A stretch of 63,447 nucleotides of DNA, counting the filler, from Lenisia limosa (Eukaryota; Protista; Breviatea): assembly GCA_001655205.1 (NCBI GenBank). It is 17 parts of 17 records of this genome, joined end to end, with 100 filler letters (N's around TTAATTAATTAA, not from the genome) between each part and the next. Parts side by side here need not be neighbours in the genome. Positions count along the whole stretch, not along the records: positions 39,604 to 46,817 come from LPNZ01010480.1; 16 more parts are not named here. One strand, 5' to 3'. Shown in pieces: positions 39,290 through 47,149 of this stretch (positions are counted from its first letter, which is position 1; the number at the start of each line of letters is the position of its first letter). The translations under genes were made by a program, and so were the position numbers. Below the pieces are notes generated by a model that ran no database searches, had not been told where the DNA came from, and saw nothing but the letters and a program-made list of their open reading frames with translations.

Positions 39290-39605
39290 GTGAGTGCGGT
39301 GCGGTGATAAAGGGATGACTAGAGGGAAGCAAAACCTCAGCCATATTGTAGTTTTTAGATTGGCTGGTTGGGGAAGTAAAAATATATAATTTATGAAAAT
39401 CAAAAAATCTAAAATTTATCAATGCCTAACAGCAATACCTAGCAGTATTATTATAACGATACTCTCTTGTTTTATTTCACAGCATCATTACCCCCCTGAT
39501 TAGNNNNNNNNNNNNNNNNNNNNNNNNNNNNNNNNNNNNNNNNNNNNTTAATTAATTAANNNNNNNNNNNNNNNNNNNNNNNNNNNNNNNNNNNNNNNNN
39601 NNNTT

Positions 39606-41359
39606 GCTCGTCCCGAGCCGACTGATGAAGAAGACCTTGATCTCCTTGAGATCAACCGGATCATGACTGGCGACTCTGACCAAGATAGTCTCTCGTCCGA
39701 ATCCTCTCCCCTCAGTAGGAGGCGCTCCAATTTGTTTAAATTTCTTCGTAGCTAATGTGTCCCTTTCTCCTACATTTTGGCTACCTCTCACCAAACAGTT
39801 CCACCCCGCAACCCTTCGCCCATCCCTCTGCTGCTCTCCCCCTCGGACTTCTGCATACTCGCACACGTACGTTTGATATTTGAAGGGTAACAGACAGGGC
39901 TTCACTTCGGATCAAAAAAGGACTGAATTTCTCGATATTTTTTTTCTTTTTCCTAAGTGAAGCCCAAGTAACATATTTGTTCTCTTTTGGTGTAAATAGC
40001 CATCTCCAGAGTTGTAGTTTATTCCCCACAGGTTATCAACACAGACGGCTCAGAGACCACAGAACCGGTTGAGTTCACGCCATCTGACTTGGCCACCCCT
40101 TGTCACTCAGTTATTGGCACGATTTCACCGTCGGTACCATACAAGTAGGAATGGACGCTGTATCAAATTTCGCCTTCCTTCTCTTGTACTAAGCTTGTTT
40201 CCAGCCTTACCAGTGCTCTGAAGTGATGATATTTCGGGTAAACCAACGAAAATGATCAAATTTAATATTTGCCTTATTTGCTAAGGAATTTTTTTCTTAT
40301 TCAGTTCGCGAGCTGGCTGAAAATTTCTTCGTTTAATAAAAGTCAATTTTAAAGTTANNNNNNNNNNNNNNNNNNNNNNNNNNNNNNNNNNNNNNNNNNN
40401 NNNNNNNNNNNNNNNNNNNNNNNNNNNNNNNNNNNNNNNNNNNNNNNNNNNNNNNNNNNNNNNNNNNNNAGGCATTTTGAAGAGCAAGGGTGTGGCCCCT
40501 GCTGGCTCTGCGTCTTTTGCGGTCCGATATGAGCCCAACAGTAGATCGTCCAGTGACCTCTCTCACATCCCTTGTATGTACCTTTCTTTTTGATCCTGTC
40601 CTTGTTTCAGAGGTTCCCCCCCCCCCCCNNNNNNNNNNNNNNNNNNNNNNNNNNNNNNNNNNNNNNNNNNNNNNNNNNNNNNNNNNNNNNNNNNNNNNNN
40701 NNNNNNNNNNNNNNNNNNNNNNNNNNNNNNNNNNNNNNNNNNNNNNNNNNNNNNNNNNNNNNNNNNNNNNNNNNNNAGGACAGGAAGACATTGTTCCCCC
40801 ACGATTCTCGTGAGCTTTACCTGAGTTTTATTTCCGCTCCCTGGCTTTACTTCAAACCGCGATGACTGACTATCCAGGTCTCCTCTTCCGACCCTGCCTC
40901 CCCGTGAGATGAGCCCCCCTCGTTCCTGCTCACCCGCATTGGTGCCTCCGCGGTCATGCTCTCCTGGTTGCAACTTCATGCCCCTCAAAGTATGATTCTC
41001 TATCTCTTTTCAAAATCCCGCGAACCTTACTGTGTTATCTTGTTACAAACCAGGTTCATTTCCCGTTCATTGACCCACTGCGACCTGATACCCCAACTGG
41101 AAGCACCCCTATTCCTGAGGTTTGTCCTTTTTGGCATCATGAAATATTGGAAAAGCCCTCCAGGCAGCCTTTCACATTTCAGATTGACCCAGCCACTCTC
41201 CCGGTTCTCCCTGTTCCCCGCTTCGGGTGCTCGAAAAAAAAGGTTCGGAATATGTGTGCTTGTCACGATTCATTTGGCTACAGGCCCTATTGGCCCTCTT
41301 TCCCGTTGGTTTCACCACTTCAGCCTAACCAAGAAGACCCCCACCACAACCTTGCCTAG
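39606..41359 (+). CDS. 3' part of a Pro/Ser-rich gene, unknown function
   Basis: Exons PEPTDEEDLDLLEINRIMTGDSDQDSLSSESSPL, VINTDGSETTEPVEFTP..., VHFPFIDPLRPDTPTGSTPIPE, IDPATLPVLPVPRFGCSKKK. Confidence 0.5.
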
Positions 41360-42623
41360 TCCCATCCCCCATCCAAACTGTAGCACACTTGGTATTATAT
41401 ATAAGTCTGATTTCATTGCTATGCTGGAGGCGAGGCCTGGAGACTGTAAATAAGTAAGAACAAGGACTCAGCCAGCTAGTAGTGGAATAGTAGAGGATTT
41501 GAGGGAACTCTCTTCCGGTTCGCGGACCCCTTCCGACATAACCGTCGACCATTCTAATGATAACTTGCCGGTATAGTTAGTTAATTTATTCCATTACTTT
41601 TGTTTAGGCTCACTTTATGAAGGTTGGTTCTTTGAATTAATATCAATGGGAGGGCTAGGAAAGTTCCGCCCAGGAATCTTCCGCCCCCGCCCCCCCAGGA
41701 ATCTTTCCGCCAGGATTCTTCCGCAATGCTGTCTCTACCGTCTTCCTTCTTCTCTTTAGTTCATTTTTTGTGTAATCCTCTTTTGAGATAGATTGAAACC
41801 CCCATATTCCTTCCACCCAGGAATCTTTCGCCTCCTCCACATGAATCTTCCGCCGTCTTCCTTCTTCTCCATTCCTCCTACCCTTTCTTCCTTGAATCTT
41901 CTTCGCCTATGGATATGTCTTACGGTAGCAATGGAGAGGTATCTAATGCGGAGGGAGAAGATGGTGGTAGAAGCAGAGATCACGGGCTATTGGTAAAAAA
42001 AAAACGTCAGAATAGTGGACCCCGGGAGGGTAGGGGGAAGGAAGAACTGGTGTCNNNNNNNNNNNNNNNNNNNNNNNNNNNNNNNNNNNNNNNNNNNNNN
42101 NNNNNNNNNNNNNNNNNNNNNNNNNNNNNNNNNNNNNNNNNNNNNNNNNNNNNNNNNNNNNNNNNNNNNNNNNNNNNNNNNNNNNNNNNNNNNNNNNNNN
42201 NNNNNNNNNNTACATCGACATTTACTTTTGACGTTGAACTAAATAATTACTAAATTACTATTCTGATAATGTCAAATAACTATTGAAGTAATAATTATCT
42301 CTGCAAAAGCTGAGAATGAAGAAGTTTGGAAAAATTTCGATTCGATGAAGCCGGACCAGTATCCCCCATATTTATATACTCTACAACCTCCCTTGGTTCT
42401 CCACGATTCTCAATGATTCTTCGTGTGAAGGAAACAAAACACACACAGATTATTAAAGAGGAAGAAAGATTGAGGAAAGAAGAAAACACACAAGGTTCAC
42501 TTTCACTGTATTTACTGGATGACGATCTTCCTGCTCTTCCCATCGCTGAGATAATTCAATTGAATGGGTCCCTCCGTCATTGAAGGGGAAAAAAAGTTGA
42601 AATAATACCACCTCCTTGGCGCA

Positions 42624-45600
42624 ATGACCTCAATTGCTTCGACATCACTGATTTCTGACTCGAAGAAGAGTAGACCCATATCAGGGTCTGTGTGGCTGCT
42701 GCTGGGGGGGGGGGGTATGAAGATGGATTGGGCAACAAGATAGTTTTTAAAAGCGAGCTGGCATAAGATATCAGCAAATCATTCCCTTCACCTTTTCTAG
42801 TGGCTACGATGCCCAGGATTTCAGCGGTACAATCAATGGCGAAGATGAATTCACTGACTTGTCCTACCGAGCTTCATTTTTCCGGAAATCTCTCATTGAA
42901 GAGTTCAGGTTTGATTTCCTCGTGCCCCTTTAGTTTGGCTTGCATGAGCGAATTGGGATATAACATCAAACTCCTTTCAGAATTTACCCATTCGCCTTCT
43001 TATTCTTATTTGCCCAGATTGGTTGATACCGGAAGTTTTGAAGGAGCAAACATAACGGATGCACCTGTACTGTCAACTCACGACATTGAAATGGGTTTGC
43101 CTTNNNNNNNNNNNNNNNNNNNNNNNNNNNNNNNNNNNNNNNNNNNNNNNNNNNNNNNNNNNNNNNNNNNNNNNNNNNNNNNNNNNNNNNNNNNNNNNNN
43201 NNNNNNNNNNNNNNNNNNNNNNNNNCCTCAACAGCTGATCAAGTTCAAGATCTTTCAGCGAACACTTGATGAAGCAGGGCAACACGGCGATAAACGTCTG
43301 GCTCGAATCAAAAATGTCAACACCCTTCCAATTGGAGTGTGGGCTTCTTGGACTGTTTATCGTATGAGTGGATGGATTCTGGCTCTTTTTGTGAACATAA
43401 TGATTACCATGCCTCACCAATCAGACCCCATATTCCAAAGCCTGATTATGCTGTTTATATTTCTTAACGCTGTTGCTCTGGGCGTTATGGCAGAACTGCC
43501 ACAGTCGGACTACCCCACGGTTAGTCTTTTCTCATTTCACTGAACTATTTTTGATTTTTTTTTACCCCGTCCAAATTACAATACAGCTTTTCGATGCAAT
43601 TGACTTTATGTTCATGTTCTCACTGGCCATCTTTTGCCTTGAAATCGCCCTCAAATGGGCTGACAAGTTGGTGGCGAATGGGTGCAAGTAGTGATTCTGA
43701 TATATTTTTGATTGCGATGTCACTGATACAATTCTCTCTTATTTATTTTTTGAGATTTTTGGAGTTCTGGAGTGATGGATGGAATGTTTTTGATTTTGCC
43801 GTAACAGCAATGGTAGGAGGGGTAGCATACCCAAAGTATCACAAAAAATCCAACATTCTTATTTTTGGGTTGTGGTTTTGGAGTCACTATTATAGTCTGC
43901 GGTACCTGAGCTGATTATTCTCTTCCAACTACTGACAACTGACAACTCACAAACTGGTGGGTCTTGCAGAAAATCTGAACCAATGTACTATTTAATTTCT
44001 CACACTCAGGACAAGAAAGCCAGATGGATGTAGTAGCTCGTCAGCTTCGTATTTTCAGAACATTTCGAACTCTGAAGATGGTTGCGCGATTCAGGTCCTT
44101 GCGCATCATTGTCCTTACGATATTGAAAGCTTTTGAATTTCTTGGTACAATACTTCTCCTCCTGGGAATCGTCTTCTACATCTACGCTGTGGTAGCTGTC
44201 AACATCTTTGCTGAATATTCTGCTGGCAACCACACATATTCAGATAAATGGGAGTTTGAGGGGAGAGTATTTTGTTCTTAGGGTGGTCTTCAAGATTCAC
44301 TTTGCTGGTATTGACTCTTTAGAAATCTCACCAGTTCTTTTGTCACACTCTTCCAACTCCTGACCTTTGACCAGTGGTATTTCATCCACCGCGACACTGT
44401 CGCTTACGTAACTGTATGGGAATATTGATACTAATAATTGATTTTATAATGAAAGCCCCTCAATGAATAATTGCATTTTAACCATTTAGCCTTGGATGAC
44501 CACGTTATACTATGGCTCGTGGATTTTTGTCGGAGGTTTTGTATTCCGAAATGTCTTCGTCGGTGTTATGGGTTAGTGGGAGGAATGAGCTATAAACGAA
44601 AGGAACATCTTGTACCCCCTGTAATACAGAAGGTTATATATATTATATACTATATATATATACATGTAAATGCATATATACGTGTACTTTTGGCTGTTTA
44701 CTCTTTAGCATTTTAACAAAATGCAAAATTGGTCTTATTTTCAAGCGATATGATATGTGTTATAATACCTCGTTTTGTATTACTGTTATAGTTAAAAATT
44801 TTGCTGTCATCAAGGACGAGCTCGTCAAGAAACAAGCAGAGCAAGAAAAGAGGTGAGAGTTTCGTGACTCAGGGTAAATATGTTTTCTTATTCTGGTCTC
44901 CCCGCATTCTCACATAATAGAACCAACCTGGAACGAATGCGAAAGCGACTGGACAAGCAGCTTAATCGGCCCGCCAAGTGAGCACAGTGGATGGTCTCCT
45001 CTAAAGAGATAGCCTTTTTTATTGGGTATGATCTTTTAGGGGTGAGCAACCCGCCAACAGTCAAATGTCTATGATTGGGAGTGTTGCAAGTTTACAGGTG
45101 CGTTGGTTCAAGTGATTTTACACTATACCCGGTTTCAAGCTAATTTTTCAGAGCTTTACAAGCCAATCAAAGCCTAAATCAAAATCAGGCTCTACAAGGA
45201 CAGCAACAACAATGTATGCAAGGGCACTGTCAATTAATCCTGGCATCATTTTCACACACCAGGAAGTCCAAACGAGATCCAGTATTTAGAAGCATCCAAA
45301 AGGTCCAGACTCACCTTAATTCCACTCAGGTATCAAGCTCACTCCTTTTTTTTTTTTTGTTACATGTTTTGTTGACCGCCAAGGTTGGACCACCTTTGGT
45401 TCTGTCACGAGCAGCAGTGGAGCGTGTTGAGACCGCCTGGCCACGTGACACTCTTTTCAGATATTTTCAGGTTTGTGGACAATTTCTGAAACATTTCGGA
45501 CAATGCTCCAGAGAAACAAAAGATTTCATTTGGATCACATCTTTTAGTCGATTGAAGCGCTGCAAGAAAACATGCGTGAGTATAGGGAGCTTCAGGTTCT

Positions 45601-45637
45601 TGCTGCTGCAGCTCTCCACGAGTTCCATGATACTTGA
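42624..45637 (+). CDS. CATSPER2: CatSper2-like single-domain (6TM) voltage-gated Ca2+ channel subunit, near complete
   Basis: N-terminal RASFFRKSLIEEF, QQLIKFKI and LPIGVWASW; S1 FQSLIMLFIFLNAVAL; S3 FWSDGWNVFDFAVT; S4 RQLRIFRTFRTLKMVARFRSLR; pore SFVTLFQLLTFDQWY; S6 WIFVGGFVFRNVFVGVM. The C-terminus WPRDTLFRYFQ/SIEALQENMREYRELQVLAAAALHEFHDT* matches the CatSper2 tail (WPRDSLFRYF...). Confidence 0.88.
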
Positions 45638-46153
45638 AGAGTTATTTTTTTAATAAAAAAATCATTATCATGGCGACACCAGCCATTTGAAATGTACCGA
45701 TTTGGTATTAATGTATTTTCTTTATCAATATGTATTTTTTTTTTCTTGATAAAGCTTGGACATTTGTACTGTTACCAACTGTATACCAATATATGGATGT
45801 ATGGACACCATGGACACACAATCAACGCATACGGCACACGGCCACATTGCCCCCCAAGGCGGTTGCCCCCCCCAGCCAGATTTTTTTTTTCTTTTCTTTT
45901 TTTAGGTAAGAGCTTTATAAGAGCTGAGATAGTTGGATAGTTGTTCTTACACGATCTTAAAAGTTGTGGTTGAACNNNNNNNNNNNNNNNNNNNNNNNNN
46001 NNNNNNNNNNNNNNNNNNNNNNNNNNNNNNNNNNNNNNNNNNNNNNNNNNNNNNNNNNNNNNNNNNNNNNNNNNNNNNNNNNNNNNNNNNNNNNNNNNNN
46101 NNNNNNNNNNNNNNNNNNNNNNNNNNNNNNNNNNNNNNNNNNNNNNNNNNNNN

Positions 46154-46755
46154 ACCCTCACCAGCAATAGATGACAAGGAGGTTGGAATGCTGCTCTCGC
46201 CATCTTTGCTTCATGGATACTGTTTTTAGGCTTGCAACATTTTTTTTACCGCATAAATTGAACCGTTGTGTGAATGCTCAACAGAAATCTTTGTTGGAAG
46301 AGTTGTTTTTACCTTTATCTCTAGTTCACAACCTTTACTGACGATGTTACTGATTTGGCCCAATGGCAAACGCGGGTTGGTTCAGCGCGAGTGGTTGAGA
46401 AATCCCAGCTGGTATGTGGAGCTGACTGGCGTGTGGGTCACACCCTGCATAAATACGAAATCGGAAAGGGTATATGAGTGGTATGGCCTGTTTGTTTTTG
46501 CCCTACCTTTTTTCTTCCTCTTTAACTTCATATCATGATTCNNNNNNNNNNNNNNNNNNNNNNNNNNNNNNNNNNNNNNNNNNNNNNNNNNNNNNNNNNN
46601 NNNNNNNNNNNNNNNNNNNNNNNNNNNNNNAAACTCATTTTTGTGGAGTTATTATACCACCTCAGGCGATAAAGCTCCTCCAGTCTCTAAGATGGGCTCC
46701 TACAGACCCAATGGAAACGGATGATGATGCGTATAGTATTCCAAGACCAAGCAGG
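46154..46755 (+). CDS. Putative gene fragment, unknown
   Basis: Candidate exons FTTFTDDVTDLAQWQTRVGSARVVEKSQL (~46325-46411) and AIKLLQSLRWAPTDPMETDDDAYSIPRPS (~46667-46755) with GT-AG borders. Confidence 0.35.
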
Positions 46756-47149
46756 TGATTAACTTTGATTTTTTGTTGATTCACTGTACTCTTTTGTTTT
46801 GTTGTTTTTTTTTTTTTNNNNNNNNNNNNNNNNNNNNNNNNNNNNNNNNNNNNNNNNNNNNTTAATTAATTAANNNNNNNNNNNNNNNNNNNNNNNNNNN
46901 NNNNNNNNNNNNNNNNNAAGGAAATGAGGGAAGCCCCGCCTTTGCTCTCCTACCCTCTCTCTGTGTCATCCTTGTGGCTCTTCTCTTCTAATACTGTTCT
47001 GGATCTATTTGCTCAGTTTGTCTCTGATAATATATTATTACTACTATTATACTCAATCCAAGTGGACTTGGCCAGAGACATCTCTCTTTATTACATAATA
47101 TTAATACATTGTATACTAGAGAGAACCACCTATGTCAGATAGTTATTTC

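What the first reader, a model, noticed from the sequence alone, without database searches (positions are those of the whole stretch)
42624..45637. CatSper2-type 'sperm' calcium channel in an apparently protist genome
Seen: a near-complete 6TM channel with a charged S4, TFDQW pore and the WPRDTLFRYF tail. Established: CatSper subunits drive animal sperm hyperactivation and have been reported patchily in some non-animal flagellated eukaryotes. Inference: this organism has a flagellated stage with a CatSper complex. The paralogue-specific N- and C-terminal motifs suggest the split into CatSper1-4 predates its divergence from animals. The organism itself cannot be identified from this window.
Basis: partly seen in the sequence, partly recalled or inferred. 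Interest (0 to 1): 0.7.

Follow-up and report, generated by a model that had tools for sequence, protein, structure and literature searches.

The report
CatSper2 channel gene in a breviate protist
This is a real, spliced and expressed gene for the CatSper2 subunit of the "sperm" calcium channel, and it lies in the genome of the anaerobic amoeboflagellate Lenisia limosa. It adds one more protist lineage to a channel family already known to be older than animals.

Summary
A gene of about 18 exons on the + strand runs from the ATG at 42624 to the TGA at 45635-45637. It encodes one 6TM voltage-gated-type repeat with a five-charge S4, a T-F-D-Q-W pore and the WPRDTLFRYF tail.

- **Splicing:** polyA-RNA contigs show 13 GT..AG introns.
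- **Organism:** a 276-aa Trinity ORF of Lenisia limosa (Breviatea) in EukProt is identical to exons 9-18. The host is therefore a flagellated protist, not an animal.
- **Assembly gap:** both sides belong to the same gene and are collinear with homologues. About 12 residues are missing, and the gap probably holds an intron.
- **Orthology:** against solved structures, CatSper2 scores 100 bits for the Lenisia protein and CatSper3 41.8 bits. For the closest full-length relative, CatSper2 scores 230 bits and the other CatSper subunits at most 75. The N-terminal and tail motifs are shared with proteins named CatSper2 from sponges to mammals, fungi and many protists.

Not tested: a joint tree with CatSper1/3/4, and whether Lenisia has the other subunits. 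An ancient origin of CatSper is already published, so this is a new member of a known kind and of modest interest.

The parts
42523..42685 (+). Exon 1: 5' UTR plus the start codon at 42624. It encodes 20 residues and two bases of a split Gly codon. The donor is GT at 42686.
   Evidence: An RNA contig covers 42523-42685 and ends exactly at the donor. The ATG is the first one after an in-frame stop. The phase fits exon 2 (sequence reading).
42801..42908 (+). Exon 2: the N-terminal cytoplasmic motif D-L-S-Y-R-A-S-F-F-R-K-S-L-I-E-E-F-R, which is conserved in CatSper2.
   Evidence: tblastn with five homologues aligns 42853-42909 to their N-termini. MAFFT alignment A1. The same region of Rhodelphis aligns to residues 13 onward of mouse CatSper2. 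No RNA contig lies here, so the splice sites are predicted.
43018..43103 (+). Exon 3: the A-P-x-x-S-T-x-D-I motif. It either ends at a probable GT donor at 43095 or runs on into the gap.
   Evidence: Alignment A1 places it between the LIEEF and LIKFK motifs of the homologues. The donor at 43095 is an inference from the spacing in homologues.
43104..43225 (.). Assembly gap inside the gene. It hides about 12 residues and probably an intron.
   Evidence: DNA contigs of run X1 stop at both edges with loose ends. One runs 48 nt into a C homopolymer. The other has 78 nt ending in letters that read M-Q-F-T-K-L-L-R-E-T in frame with 43226. Homologues have x-L-F-K-N-I-L-R-E-T at that position.
43226..43361 (+). 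Exon with the P-Q-Q-L-I-K-F-K motif and the pre-S1 segment. It is open at its 5' side into the gap.
   Evidence: tblastn hit of 80 bits to Rhodelphis. The RNA joint 43361>43425 is GT..AG.
43425..43519 (+). Exon: S1.
   Evidence: RNA joints 43361>43425 and 43519>43587. Phases check.
43587..43666 (+). Exon: S2, with the conserved Glu in L-E-I-A-L-K-W.
   Evidence: RNA joints. tblastn.
43755..43812 (+). Exon: S2-S3 linker and the start of S3 (W-N-V-F-D-F).
   Evidence: RNA joint 43666>43755. The 3' junction 43812>43896 is not covered by an RNA contig; it is predicted from GT..AG, phase and homology.
43896..43956 (+). Exon: end of S3 and the S3-S4 loop.
   Evidence: RNA joint 43956>44010. tblastn.
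44010..44253 (+). Exon: S4 (five R/K at every third position, 44039-44077), the S4-S5 linker and S5.
   Evidence: Pfam Ion_trans, E 1e-11. The best single-stretch PDB match is CatSper2 at 39.4 bits. Identical to P0001.
44323..44413 (+). Exon: pore helix and selectivity filter T-F-D-Q-W (44363-44377).
   Evidence: RNA joints. Identical to P0001 residues 60-89. Homologues carry L-T-[LF]-D-Q-W.
44490..44571 (+). Exon: S6.
   Evidence: Pfam Ion_trans profile positions 204-229. RNA joints. P0001 residues 90-116.
44792..45329 (+). Five short exons (44792-44852, 44921-44977, 45040-45097, 45152-45213, 45263-45329) encoding the poorly conserved, charged and Ser/Thr-rich C-terminal linker.
   Evidence: All junctions are seen as GT..AG joints in RNA contigs. 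The peptides lie in order in P0001.
45384..45470 (+). Exon with the CatSper2 tail motif W-P-R-D-T-L-F-R-Y-F.
   Evidence: Its only PDB hit is mouse CatSper2 residues 547-559. The motif is present in nearly all homologues.
45548..45637 (+). Last exon: the L-Q-E-N-M-R-E-Y helix, then the stop TGA at 45635-45637.
   Evidence: RNA joint 45470>45548, with an RNA contig running on to 45684. It aligns to the C-termini of homologues and of mouse CatSper2 via Rhodelphis.

Best explanation
The locus is the CatSper2 orthologue of the breviate amoeboflagellate Lenisia limosa. It encodes one pore-forming subunit of about 530 residues.

The protein has, in order:
- a cytoplasmic N-terminus with CatSper2-specific motifs;
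- an intact voltage-sensor domain, with acidic residues in S2 and S3 and five positive charges in S4;
- a pore with the Ca2+-channel filter T-x-D-x-W;
- S6;
- a long variable linker;
- the conserved WPRD..LF.YF / LQEN helix tail.

Shown here: the gene structure, splicing, presence in polyA RNA, the identity of the host, and orthology to CatSper2.

Inferred from what is known of animal CatSper: four such subunits (CatSper1-4, one of each) form a weakly voltage-dependent, Ca2+-selective channel in the flagellar membrane, and its Ca2+ entry changes the flagellar waveform. In Lenisia this would steer the flagella of the trophic cell, because the RNA came from a growing enrichment culture.
For: - Splicing: 13 GT..AG joints in RNA contigs of a polyA library from the same study as the DNA. 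All exon phases are consistent down to the stop.
- Host: the independent Trinity ORF P0001 (EukProt Lenisia limosa) is identical to the last ten exons.
- Channel family: Pfam Ion_trans.
- PDB phmmer with P0001: mouse CatSper2 scores 100.3 bits, the best single-repeat hit. CatSper3 scores 41.8. CatSper1 and CatSper4 fall below the 60 rows listed.
- PDB phmmer with Rhodelphis P0009, the closest full-length relative: CatSper2 scores 230.4 bits and CatSper4 75. The match includes the N-terminal and tail stretches.
- Tail exon: its only PDB hit is CatSper2 residues 547-559.
- Naming: relatives found with coral P0083 are named CatSper2 from sponges to primates. They also include Allomyces, Blastocladiella, Rozella and Paratrimastix.
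- Shared motifs: every single-repeat hit of at least 300 aa has the L-T-[LF]-D-Q-W pore type except Chromosphaera P0087, and most have the WPRD tail.
- Tree: Lenisia lies inside the CatSper2 set (100/100 against BacNav-like outgroups) and outside animals (100/99).
- Language-model features: the nearest named cluster is CatSper2 (a lead only).
- Biology: breviates are biflagellate amoeboflagellates (PMC12453579).
Against: - No tree with CatSper1, 3 and 4 could be built, so paralogue assignment rests on score differences, motifs and the naming of relatives.
- The other three pore subunits and the auxiliary subunits were not looked for in Lenisia, so a complex is not shown.
- The N-terminal exons 2 and 3 and one junction (43812>43896) have no RNA support.
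- About 12 residues lie in an assembly gap.
- The RNA data are contigs from a metatranscriptomic library. They show spliced molecules, but not their level or strand.
- No close orthologue from another breviate was found, although that search was limited by length and shared words.
Confidence: 0.88

Rival explanations
1. The protein is a CatSper2-derived subunit that works alone as a homotetramer, like bacterial NaV/CaV channels, because Lenisia has lost or never had CatSper1, 3 and 4.
For: Only this one subunit was seen. Nothing in the window or revealed other Lenisia single-repeat channels. CatSper genes are known for lineage-specific loss (PMC6660944, PMC5553355).
Against: The searches used could not have found the paralogues: one search listed only its top 150 hits, and searches were limited by length and shared words. 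In animals, the protein levels of the subunits are strictly interdependent (PMC5362262). The conserved CatSper2-specific tail suggests a conserved partner interface.
Confidence: 0.1
2. The scaffold is not from Lenisia but from another eukaryote, either a contaminant or co-cultured organism of the enrichment or an animal.
For: Both the DNA and the RNA come from a mixed (metagenomic and metatranscriptomic) culture. The species label rests on one EukProt record built from the same kind of data.
Against: - The tree places the protein outside animals (100/99) and outside opisthokonts (90/99).
- The gene has very short introns of 49-115 nt.
- The DNA contig has the same depth (about 26.6) over the whole gene, and it is part of a 3.6-kb contig in a run whose longest contig is 178 kb.
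Confidence: 0.03
3. It is a generic single-repeat voltage-gated cation channel, either a relative of Cav/Nav repeats or a BacNav-like gene acquired from bacteria, and not a CatSper.
For: In whole-sequence scores, four-repeat T-type and L-type Ca2+ channels outrank CatSper2. The pore exon alone does not discriminate.
Against: - Those scores are sums over four repeats. Per stretch, CatSper2 is best: 39.4 against at most 30.7 bits.
- The N-terminal and tail motifs occur only in CatSper2.
- BacNav-like proteins are separated by a branch of length 2.2 with 100/100 support.
- The gene has about 17 spliceosomal introns.
Confidence: 0.02

Closest known systems
Mouse CatSper2 (chain B of the CatSpermasome structure 7EEB; also 9ubw chain B)
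   Same: - One 6TM repeat.
- S4 with charges at every third position.
- T-x-D-x-W filter.
- N-terminal R-x-x-L-I-x-x-F and Q-L-x-x-F motifs.
- Tail W-P-R-D-S/T-L-F-R-Y-F followed by an L-Q-x-N-L-x-E helix near the C-terminus.
   Different: - Sequence similarity is modest: 100 bits against the mouse protein over the 276 known residues. The linker between S6 and the tail is unrelated in sequence.
- Lenisia has five S4 charges in register, while the aligned mouse segment shows four (alignment).
- The host is a free-living anaerobic protist with no known sperm.
Protist and algal CatSper2-type proteins: Rhodelphis limneticus P0009, Cyanophora P0025/P0119, Cantina P0041, Diphylleia P0126/P0299, Ploeotia P0093, Chara P0055, Paratrimastix P0216
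   Same: The same architecture and the same three motifs. Identity in the S4-S5 exon is 63-66% to Rhodelphis and Cyanophora and 44% overall to Cantina. All are unannotated, or named only 'ion transport domain' proteins, except Paratrimastix.
   Different: Lenisia has T-F-D-Q-W where most have T-L-D-Q-W. It has a long terminal branch (1.16) and no resolved sister.
Fungal zoospore CatSper2 (Allomyces, Blastocladiella, Catenaria, Rozella)
   Same: Non-animal, flagellated-cell lineages within Obazoa that carry the same orthologue.
   Different: They group with animals in an opisthokont clade (90/99) that excludes Lenisia.
Bacterial single-repeat NaV/CaV-type channels (BacNav-like P0233, P0234; PDB NavAb, NaChBac)
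   Same: Single 6TM repeat that must tetramerise, with the same Pfam family.
   Different: They lack the CatSper2 N-terminal and tail motifs. Their filters differ (T-L-E-S-W, T-M-D-G-W). They are separated by a long, fully supported branch. They have no introns.

Membership tests
CatSper2 (pore-forming subunit 2 of the CatSper channel) | One voltage-gated-type 6TM repeat (Pfam Ion_trans), not four | tested here: met
   Pfam Ion_trans matches the S4-S5 and S6 exons. S1-S6 can be read in exons 43425-44571. The ORF ends after one repeat, and the Trinity ORF P0001 agrees.
CatSper2 (pore-forming subunit 2 of the CatSper channel) | Selectivity filter [T/S]-x-[D/E]-x-W with an acidic residue | tested here: met
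   T-F-D-Q-W at 44363-44377. Homologues have T-L-D-Q/H-W.
CatSper2 (pore-forming subunit 2 of the CatSper channel) | S4 with several R/K at every third position | tested here: met
   R-x-x-R-x-x-R-x-x-R-x-x-K at 44039-44077. It aligns to the S4 of mouse CatSper2.
CatSper2 (pore-forming subunit 2 of the CatSper channel) | Closer to CatSper2 than to CatSper1, 3 or 4 | tested here: met
   P0001 scores 100.3 bits to CatSper2 and 41.8 to CatSper3, with the others below the list. P0009 scores 230.4 to CatSper2 and 75 to CatSper4. Word searches with a relative return only proteins named CatSper2.
CatSper2 (pore-forming subunit 2 of the CatSper channel) | CatSper2-specific cytoplasmic motifs: N-terminal F-R-x-x-L-I-x-x-F and x-L-I/V-K/R-F, and C-terminal W-P-R-D-x-L-F-x-Y plus an L-Q-E-N helix | tested here: met
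   The tail exon's only PDB hit is CatSper2.
CatSper2 (pore-forming subunit 2 of the CatSper channel) | Falls inside the CatSper2 clade in a tree that also holds CatSper1, 3 and 4 | not tested
   No CatSper1/3/4 sequence could be obtained by reference: the lists were filled by CatSper2 and four-repeat channels. The tree holds CatSper2-type proteins and BacNav-like outgroups only.
CatSper2 (pore-forming subunit 2 of the CatSper channel) | Assembles with CatSper1, 3, 4 and auxiliary subunits in the flagellar membrane | not testable with these tools
   Only this 7.2-kb piece of the genome is at hand. The rest of the Lenisia genome or proteome could not be searched.
Four-repeat Cav/Nav channels | Four homologous 6TM repeats in one polypeptide | tested here: not met
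   There is a single repeat followed by the tail and a stop. The high whole-sequence scores to Cav3 are sums over four repeats.

The most novel reading that the evidence does not exclude
CatSper2 is transcribed in growing, asexual, anaerobic amoeboflagellate cells. Its orthologues also occur in glaucophytes, Rhodelphis, euglenids, CRuMs, metamonads, stramenopiles and Chara. CatSper would then be an ancestral (LECA-age) Ca2+ channel of the ordinary eukaryotic flagellum, and its restriction to sperm would be a derived animal state. Breviates such as culturable relatives of Lenisia could become a system for studying CatSper outside gametes.
Probability: 0.35. Interest if true: 0.55.

Novelty: new member of a known kind. 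Interest (0 to 1): 0.33.

Why it matters
CatSper is the key Ca2+ channel of animal sperm. It is a contraceptive and infertility target, and it cannot be expressed heterologously. Nothing is known about how it is regulated outside animals (PMC6660944).

A correctly annotated CatSper2 in Breviatea, the sister lineage of apusomonads plus opisthokonts, fills a gap in the known distribution. I found no paper in the held library that links CatSper with breviates.

The finding also shows expression in a trophic flagellate. It supports the already published view that the four-subunit channel predates animals, but it does not change that view.

Tried and rejected
- **ORF 42800-43543.** I first took it for an intron, because no RNA contig lies on 42716-43093. 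I rejected this once homologues showed that exon 2 and exon 3 are coding. RNA coverage is simply low.
- **One exon from 43226 to 43519.** Rejected: RNA shows a 63-nt in-frame intron at 43362-43424.
- **An acceptor giving frame 0 after 45097.** Rejected: RNA shows two further small exons, 45152-45213 and 45263-45329.
- **Pore, N-terminal and S1 exons against PDB**. They were too short or too little conserved to discriminate.
- **ESM Atlas with the S4-S5 exon**. It returned only generic Ion_trans fragments.
- **Obtaining CatSper1/3/4 as referenceable sequences.** I tried the representative search and word searches, including a core-only search at E up to 10. All listed rows were CatSper2.
- **Finding other breviate orthologues with P0001**. 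None appeared within the length window.
- **Cai et al. 2014 and Hamann et al. 2016** are not held in the library.
- **Rfam.** Nothing in the piece.
- **Joined model.** Searches were done exon by exon by reference, or with the pre-existing natural ORF P0001.
Full report
**1. What is in the sequence.**
The piece 39604-46817 is eukaryotic DNA of 43% G+C, broken by several N gaps that are flanked by homopolymer runs. Three-frame translation of 42600-45700 shows a chain of short open stretches on the + strand. Together they spell a voltage-gated-type cation channel.
- S1 lies at 43425-43519 and S2 at 43587-43666.
- S3 spans 43755-43812 and 43896-43956.
- S4 to S5 lies at 44010-44253, the pore at 44323-44413 and S6 at 44490-44571.
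- Seven small C-terminal exons follow, ending at the TGA at 45635-45637.

- S4 reads R-x-x-R-x-x-R-x-x-R-x-x-K at 44039-44077.
- The filter is T-F-D-Q-W at 44363-44377.
- W-P-R-D-T-L-F-R-Y-F lies in exon 45384-45470.
- The ATG at 42624 is the first one after an in-frame stop.

**2. Is it a real, spliced gene?**
One public study holds the stretch. DNA run X1 holds all sampled words. Run X2, a polyA RNA run labelled metatranscriptomic, holds 30% of them. Laying their contigs on 42212-45963 gave 13 RNA joints, all GT..AG, with the same boundaries I had derived from phase and homology. It also revealed two things I had missed:
- a 63-nt in-frame intron at 43362-43424;
- two extra small exons at 45152-45213 and 45263-45329.

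A phase check over all 15 exons downstream of the gap runs without a stop to the TGA and gives 442 residues. One RNA contig covers 42523-42685 and ends exactly at a GT, so exon 1 with the ATG is transcribed. The junction 43812>43896 and exons 2 and 3 have no RNA contig. RNA depth is low, so this is not evidence against them.

**3. The organism.**
I searched exon by exon by reference and did not join the exons into a typed model. The exons are too short for the word search, which only sees proteins of 0.55-1.75 times the query length. I therefore used the representative search with the 80-aa S4-S5 exon.
- Its best hit, P0001 (276 aa), is 100% identical.
- P0001 is the EukProt record EP01086_Lenisia_limosa_P005241, a Trinity ORF.
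- All ten exon peptides from 44012 onward occur in order in P0001 and cover it completely, with single residues at the predicted split codons.

This independently confirms the splicing. It also names the host as Lenisia limosa, a breviate. Breviates are free-living anaerobic amoeboflagellates with two flagella, sister to apusomonads plus opisthokonts (PMC12453579; bioRxiv 10.64898/2026.01.29.702055). The 2016 date and the mixed-culture polyA library fit the original Lenisia enrichment culture, but the run names are coded, so I cannot state that directly.

**4. The assembly gap at 43104-43225.**
No DNA or RNA contig bridges it. The public DNA contigs stop at both edges. One continues for 48 letters into a C homopolymer. 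The other has 78 letters before 43226, and the last 30 read M-Q-F-T-K-L-L-R-E-T in frame with P-Q-Q-L-I-K-F.

tblastn with five homologues and alignment A1 show three collinear pieces:
- exon 2 (42801-42908) matches D-L-x-x-R-x-x-F-R-x-x-L-I-E-E-F;
- exon 3 (43018-43103) matches A-P-x-x-S-T-x-D-I;
- the post-gap piece matches P-x-x-L-I-K-F-K.

The homologues have only about 12-13 residues between the second and third pieces, and ten of these are seen in the loose end. So both sides belong to one gene in the right order. The agreement of frame across the Ns is meaningless, because the gap length is only an estimate. The spacing is best explained by an intron inside the gap with its donor at the GT at 43095. 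That last point is an inference.

**5. Which channel?**
Pfam recognises Ion_trans. In PDB searches the whole-sequence ranking is led by four-repeat Cav3/Cav1 channels, but only because their four repeats add up.
- Per stretch, the best match of the S4-S5 exon is CatSper2 at 39.4 bits. The best Cav stretch shown in the printed alignments scores 30.7 bits.
- With P0001, mouse CatSper2 (7EEB chain B) scores 100.3 bits in two stretches. CatSper3 scores 41.8. CatSper1 and CatSper4 fall below the 60 listed rows.
- The tail exon alone has a single PDB hit, CatSper2 residues 547-559, W-P-R-D-S-L-F-R-Y-F.
- The closest full-length relative, Rhodelphis limneticus P0009 (63% identical in the S4-S5 exon), scores 230.4 bits to CatSper2 and 75 to CatSper4. 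The match runs from residue 13 of the mouse protein through S6, with a second stretch over the tail.
- Word searches with the coral relative P0083 returned 90 and then 120 listed proteins. Wherever a source names them, they are 'cation channel sperm-associated protein 2'. They range from sponges and ctenophores to primates, and also include Allomyces, Blastocladiella, Catenaria, Rozella, Quaeritorhiza, Paratrimastix, Hondaea and others.
- Every single-repeat hit of at least 300 aa except Chromosphaera P0087 carries the L-T-[LF]-D-Q-W pore type, and most carry the WPRD tail. Their sources include Cyanophora, Rhodelphis, Chara, Cantina, Ploeotia, Diphylleia and Chromosphaera.
- The ESM-Atlas nearest named cluster for P0001 is CatSper2, at score 0.88. 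This is a lead only.

**6. Tree.**
I built a careful IQ-TREE of 43 rows. These were 41 CatSper2-type proteins, including P0001, and two BacNav-like outgroups (P0233 and P0234). Many near-duplicate animal rows and fragments were left out.
- The CatSper2 set is separated from the outgroup at 100/100.
- Animals are recovered at 100/99, fungi at 89/93 and opisthokonts at 90/99.
- Lenisia sits outside the opisthokonts in an unresolved group of protist sequences, on a long branch of 1.16.

The gene tree broadly follows the species tree, which argues for vertical descent and against an animal contaminant. The tree holds no CatSper1, 3 or 4, because I could not obtain any of them by reference.

**7. 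How it most likely works.**
Shown:
- an intact voltage sensor, with Glu in S2 (L-E-I-A-L-K), Asp in S3 (F-D-F) and five S4 charges;
- a Ca2+-channel-type filter with Asp;
- the conserved CatSper2 cytoplasmic motifs;
- transcription and correct splicing in a growing culture.

Inferred from animal CatSper (PMC6660944, PMC5362262):
- the subunit occupies one of four positions in a CatSper1-4 heterotetramer in the flagellar membrane;
- the channel opens on depolarisation, and perhaps on alkalinisation or cAMP;
- the Ca2+ it admits changes flagellar beat.

sNHE is animal-specific, so regulation in Lenisia would differ (PMC6660944).

**8. Comparison with what is known, and novelty.**
It is already published that CatSper genes are widely but patchily distributed in eukaryotes. 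It is also published that the complex predates the unikont/bikont split (Cai et al. 2014, as cited in PMC6660944 and PMC5362262). I could not read the primary paper. No paper in the held library mentions CatSper together with Lenisia, Pygsuia or breviates, and the Lenisia ORF carries no functional name. This is therefore a new, correctly identified member of a known family in a lineage not yet reported. It is not a new kind of system.

**9. Verdict.**
- Observation: confirmed.
- Interpretation: supported, and the host is now identified.
- Not tested: the claim of a whole CatSper complex.
- Not done: the joint paralogue tree.
- Interest: modest.

Noticed in passing
window 41664-41869: Four copies of a motif of about 16-28 nt (core C-C-A-G-G-A-A-T-C-T-T-Y-C-G-C-C) in two pairs 122 nt apart. 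An exact 17-nt repeat (CCGTCTTCCTTCTTCTC) lies at 41738 and 41853. Both lie about 0.8 kb upstream of the CatSper2 start. They could be a duplicated segment or a promoter-region element.
   Followed up: partly
window 44634-44678 (intron 8, the only long intron at 220 nt): An AT/TA microsatellite-like stretch. The read tool skipped it as a repeat, and RNA depth is zero across the intron.
   Followed up: no
window 40617-40628, 43103 onward, 42704-42716, 45853-45861: Assembly gaps and contig breaks sit next to C or G homopolymer runs. The public DNA contig also runs into a C run right after 43103. This points to a sequencing-chemistry cause for the gaps rather than to missing large segments.
   Followed up: partly
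window 39606-39755: The 3' end of another + strand gene. It is an acidic and Ser-rich C-terminus of 49 residues ending in TAA, cut by the edge of the piece.
   Followed up: no
window 42255-42385: Several short, high-depth DNA contigs of run X1 (depth 31-105, against 26.6 for the gene) pile up here with loose ends on both sides. Two 'skips' of 67-70 nt are also seen. This looks like a dispersed repeat just upstream of the CatSper2 5' UTR.
   Followed up: no
proteins P0025 and P0119 (Cyanophora); P0087 and P0210 (Chromosphaera): Two CatSper2-type copies in each species. In the tree, both pairs look like lineage-specific duplications.
   Followed up: partly
window 46154-46817: Further open stretches with GT donors on the + strand (for example 46330-46413 and 46631-46755) suggest another intron-rich gene downstream. 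It is interrupted by two gaps.
   Followed up: no
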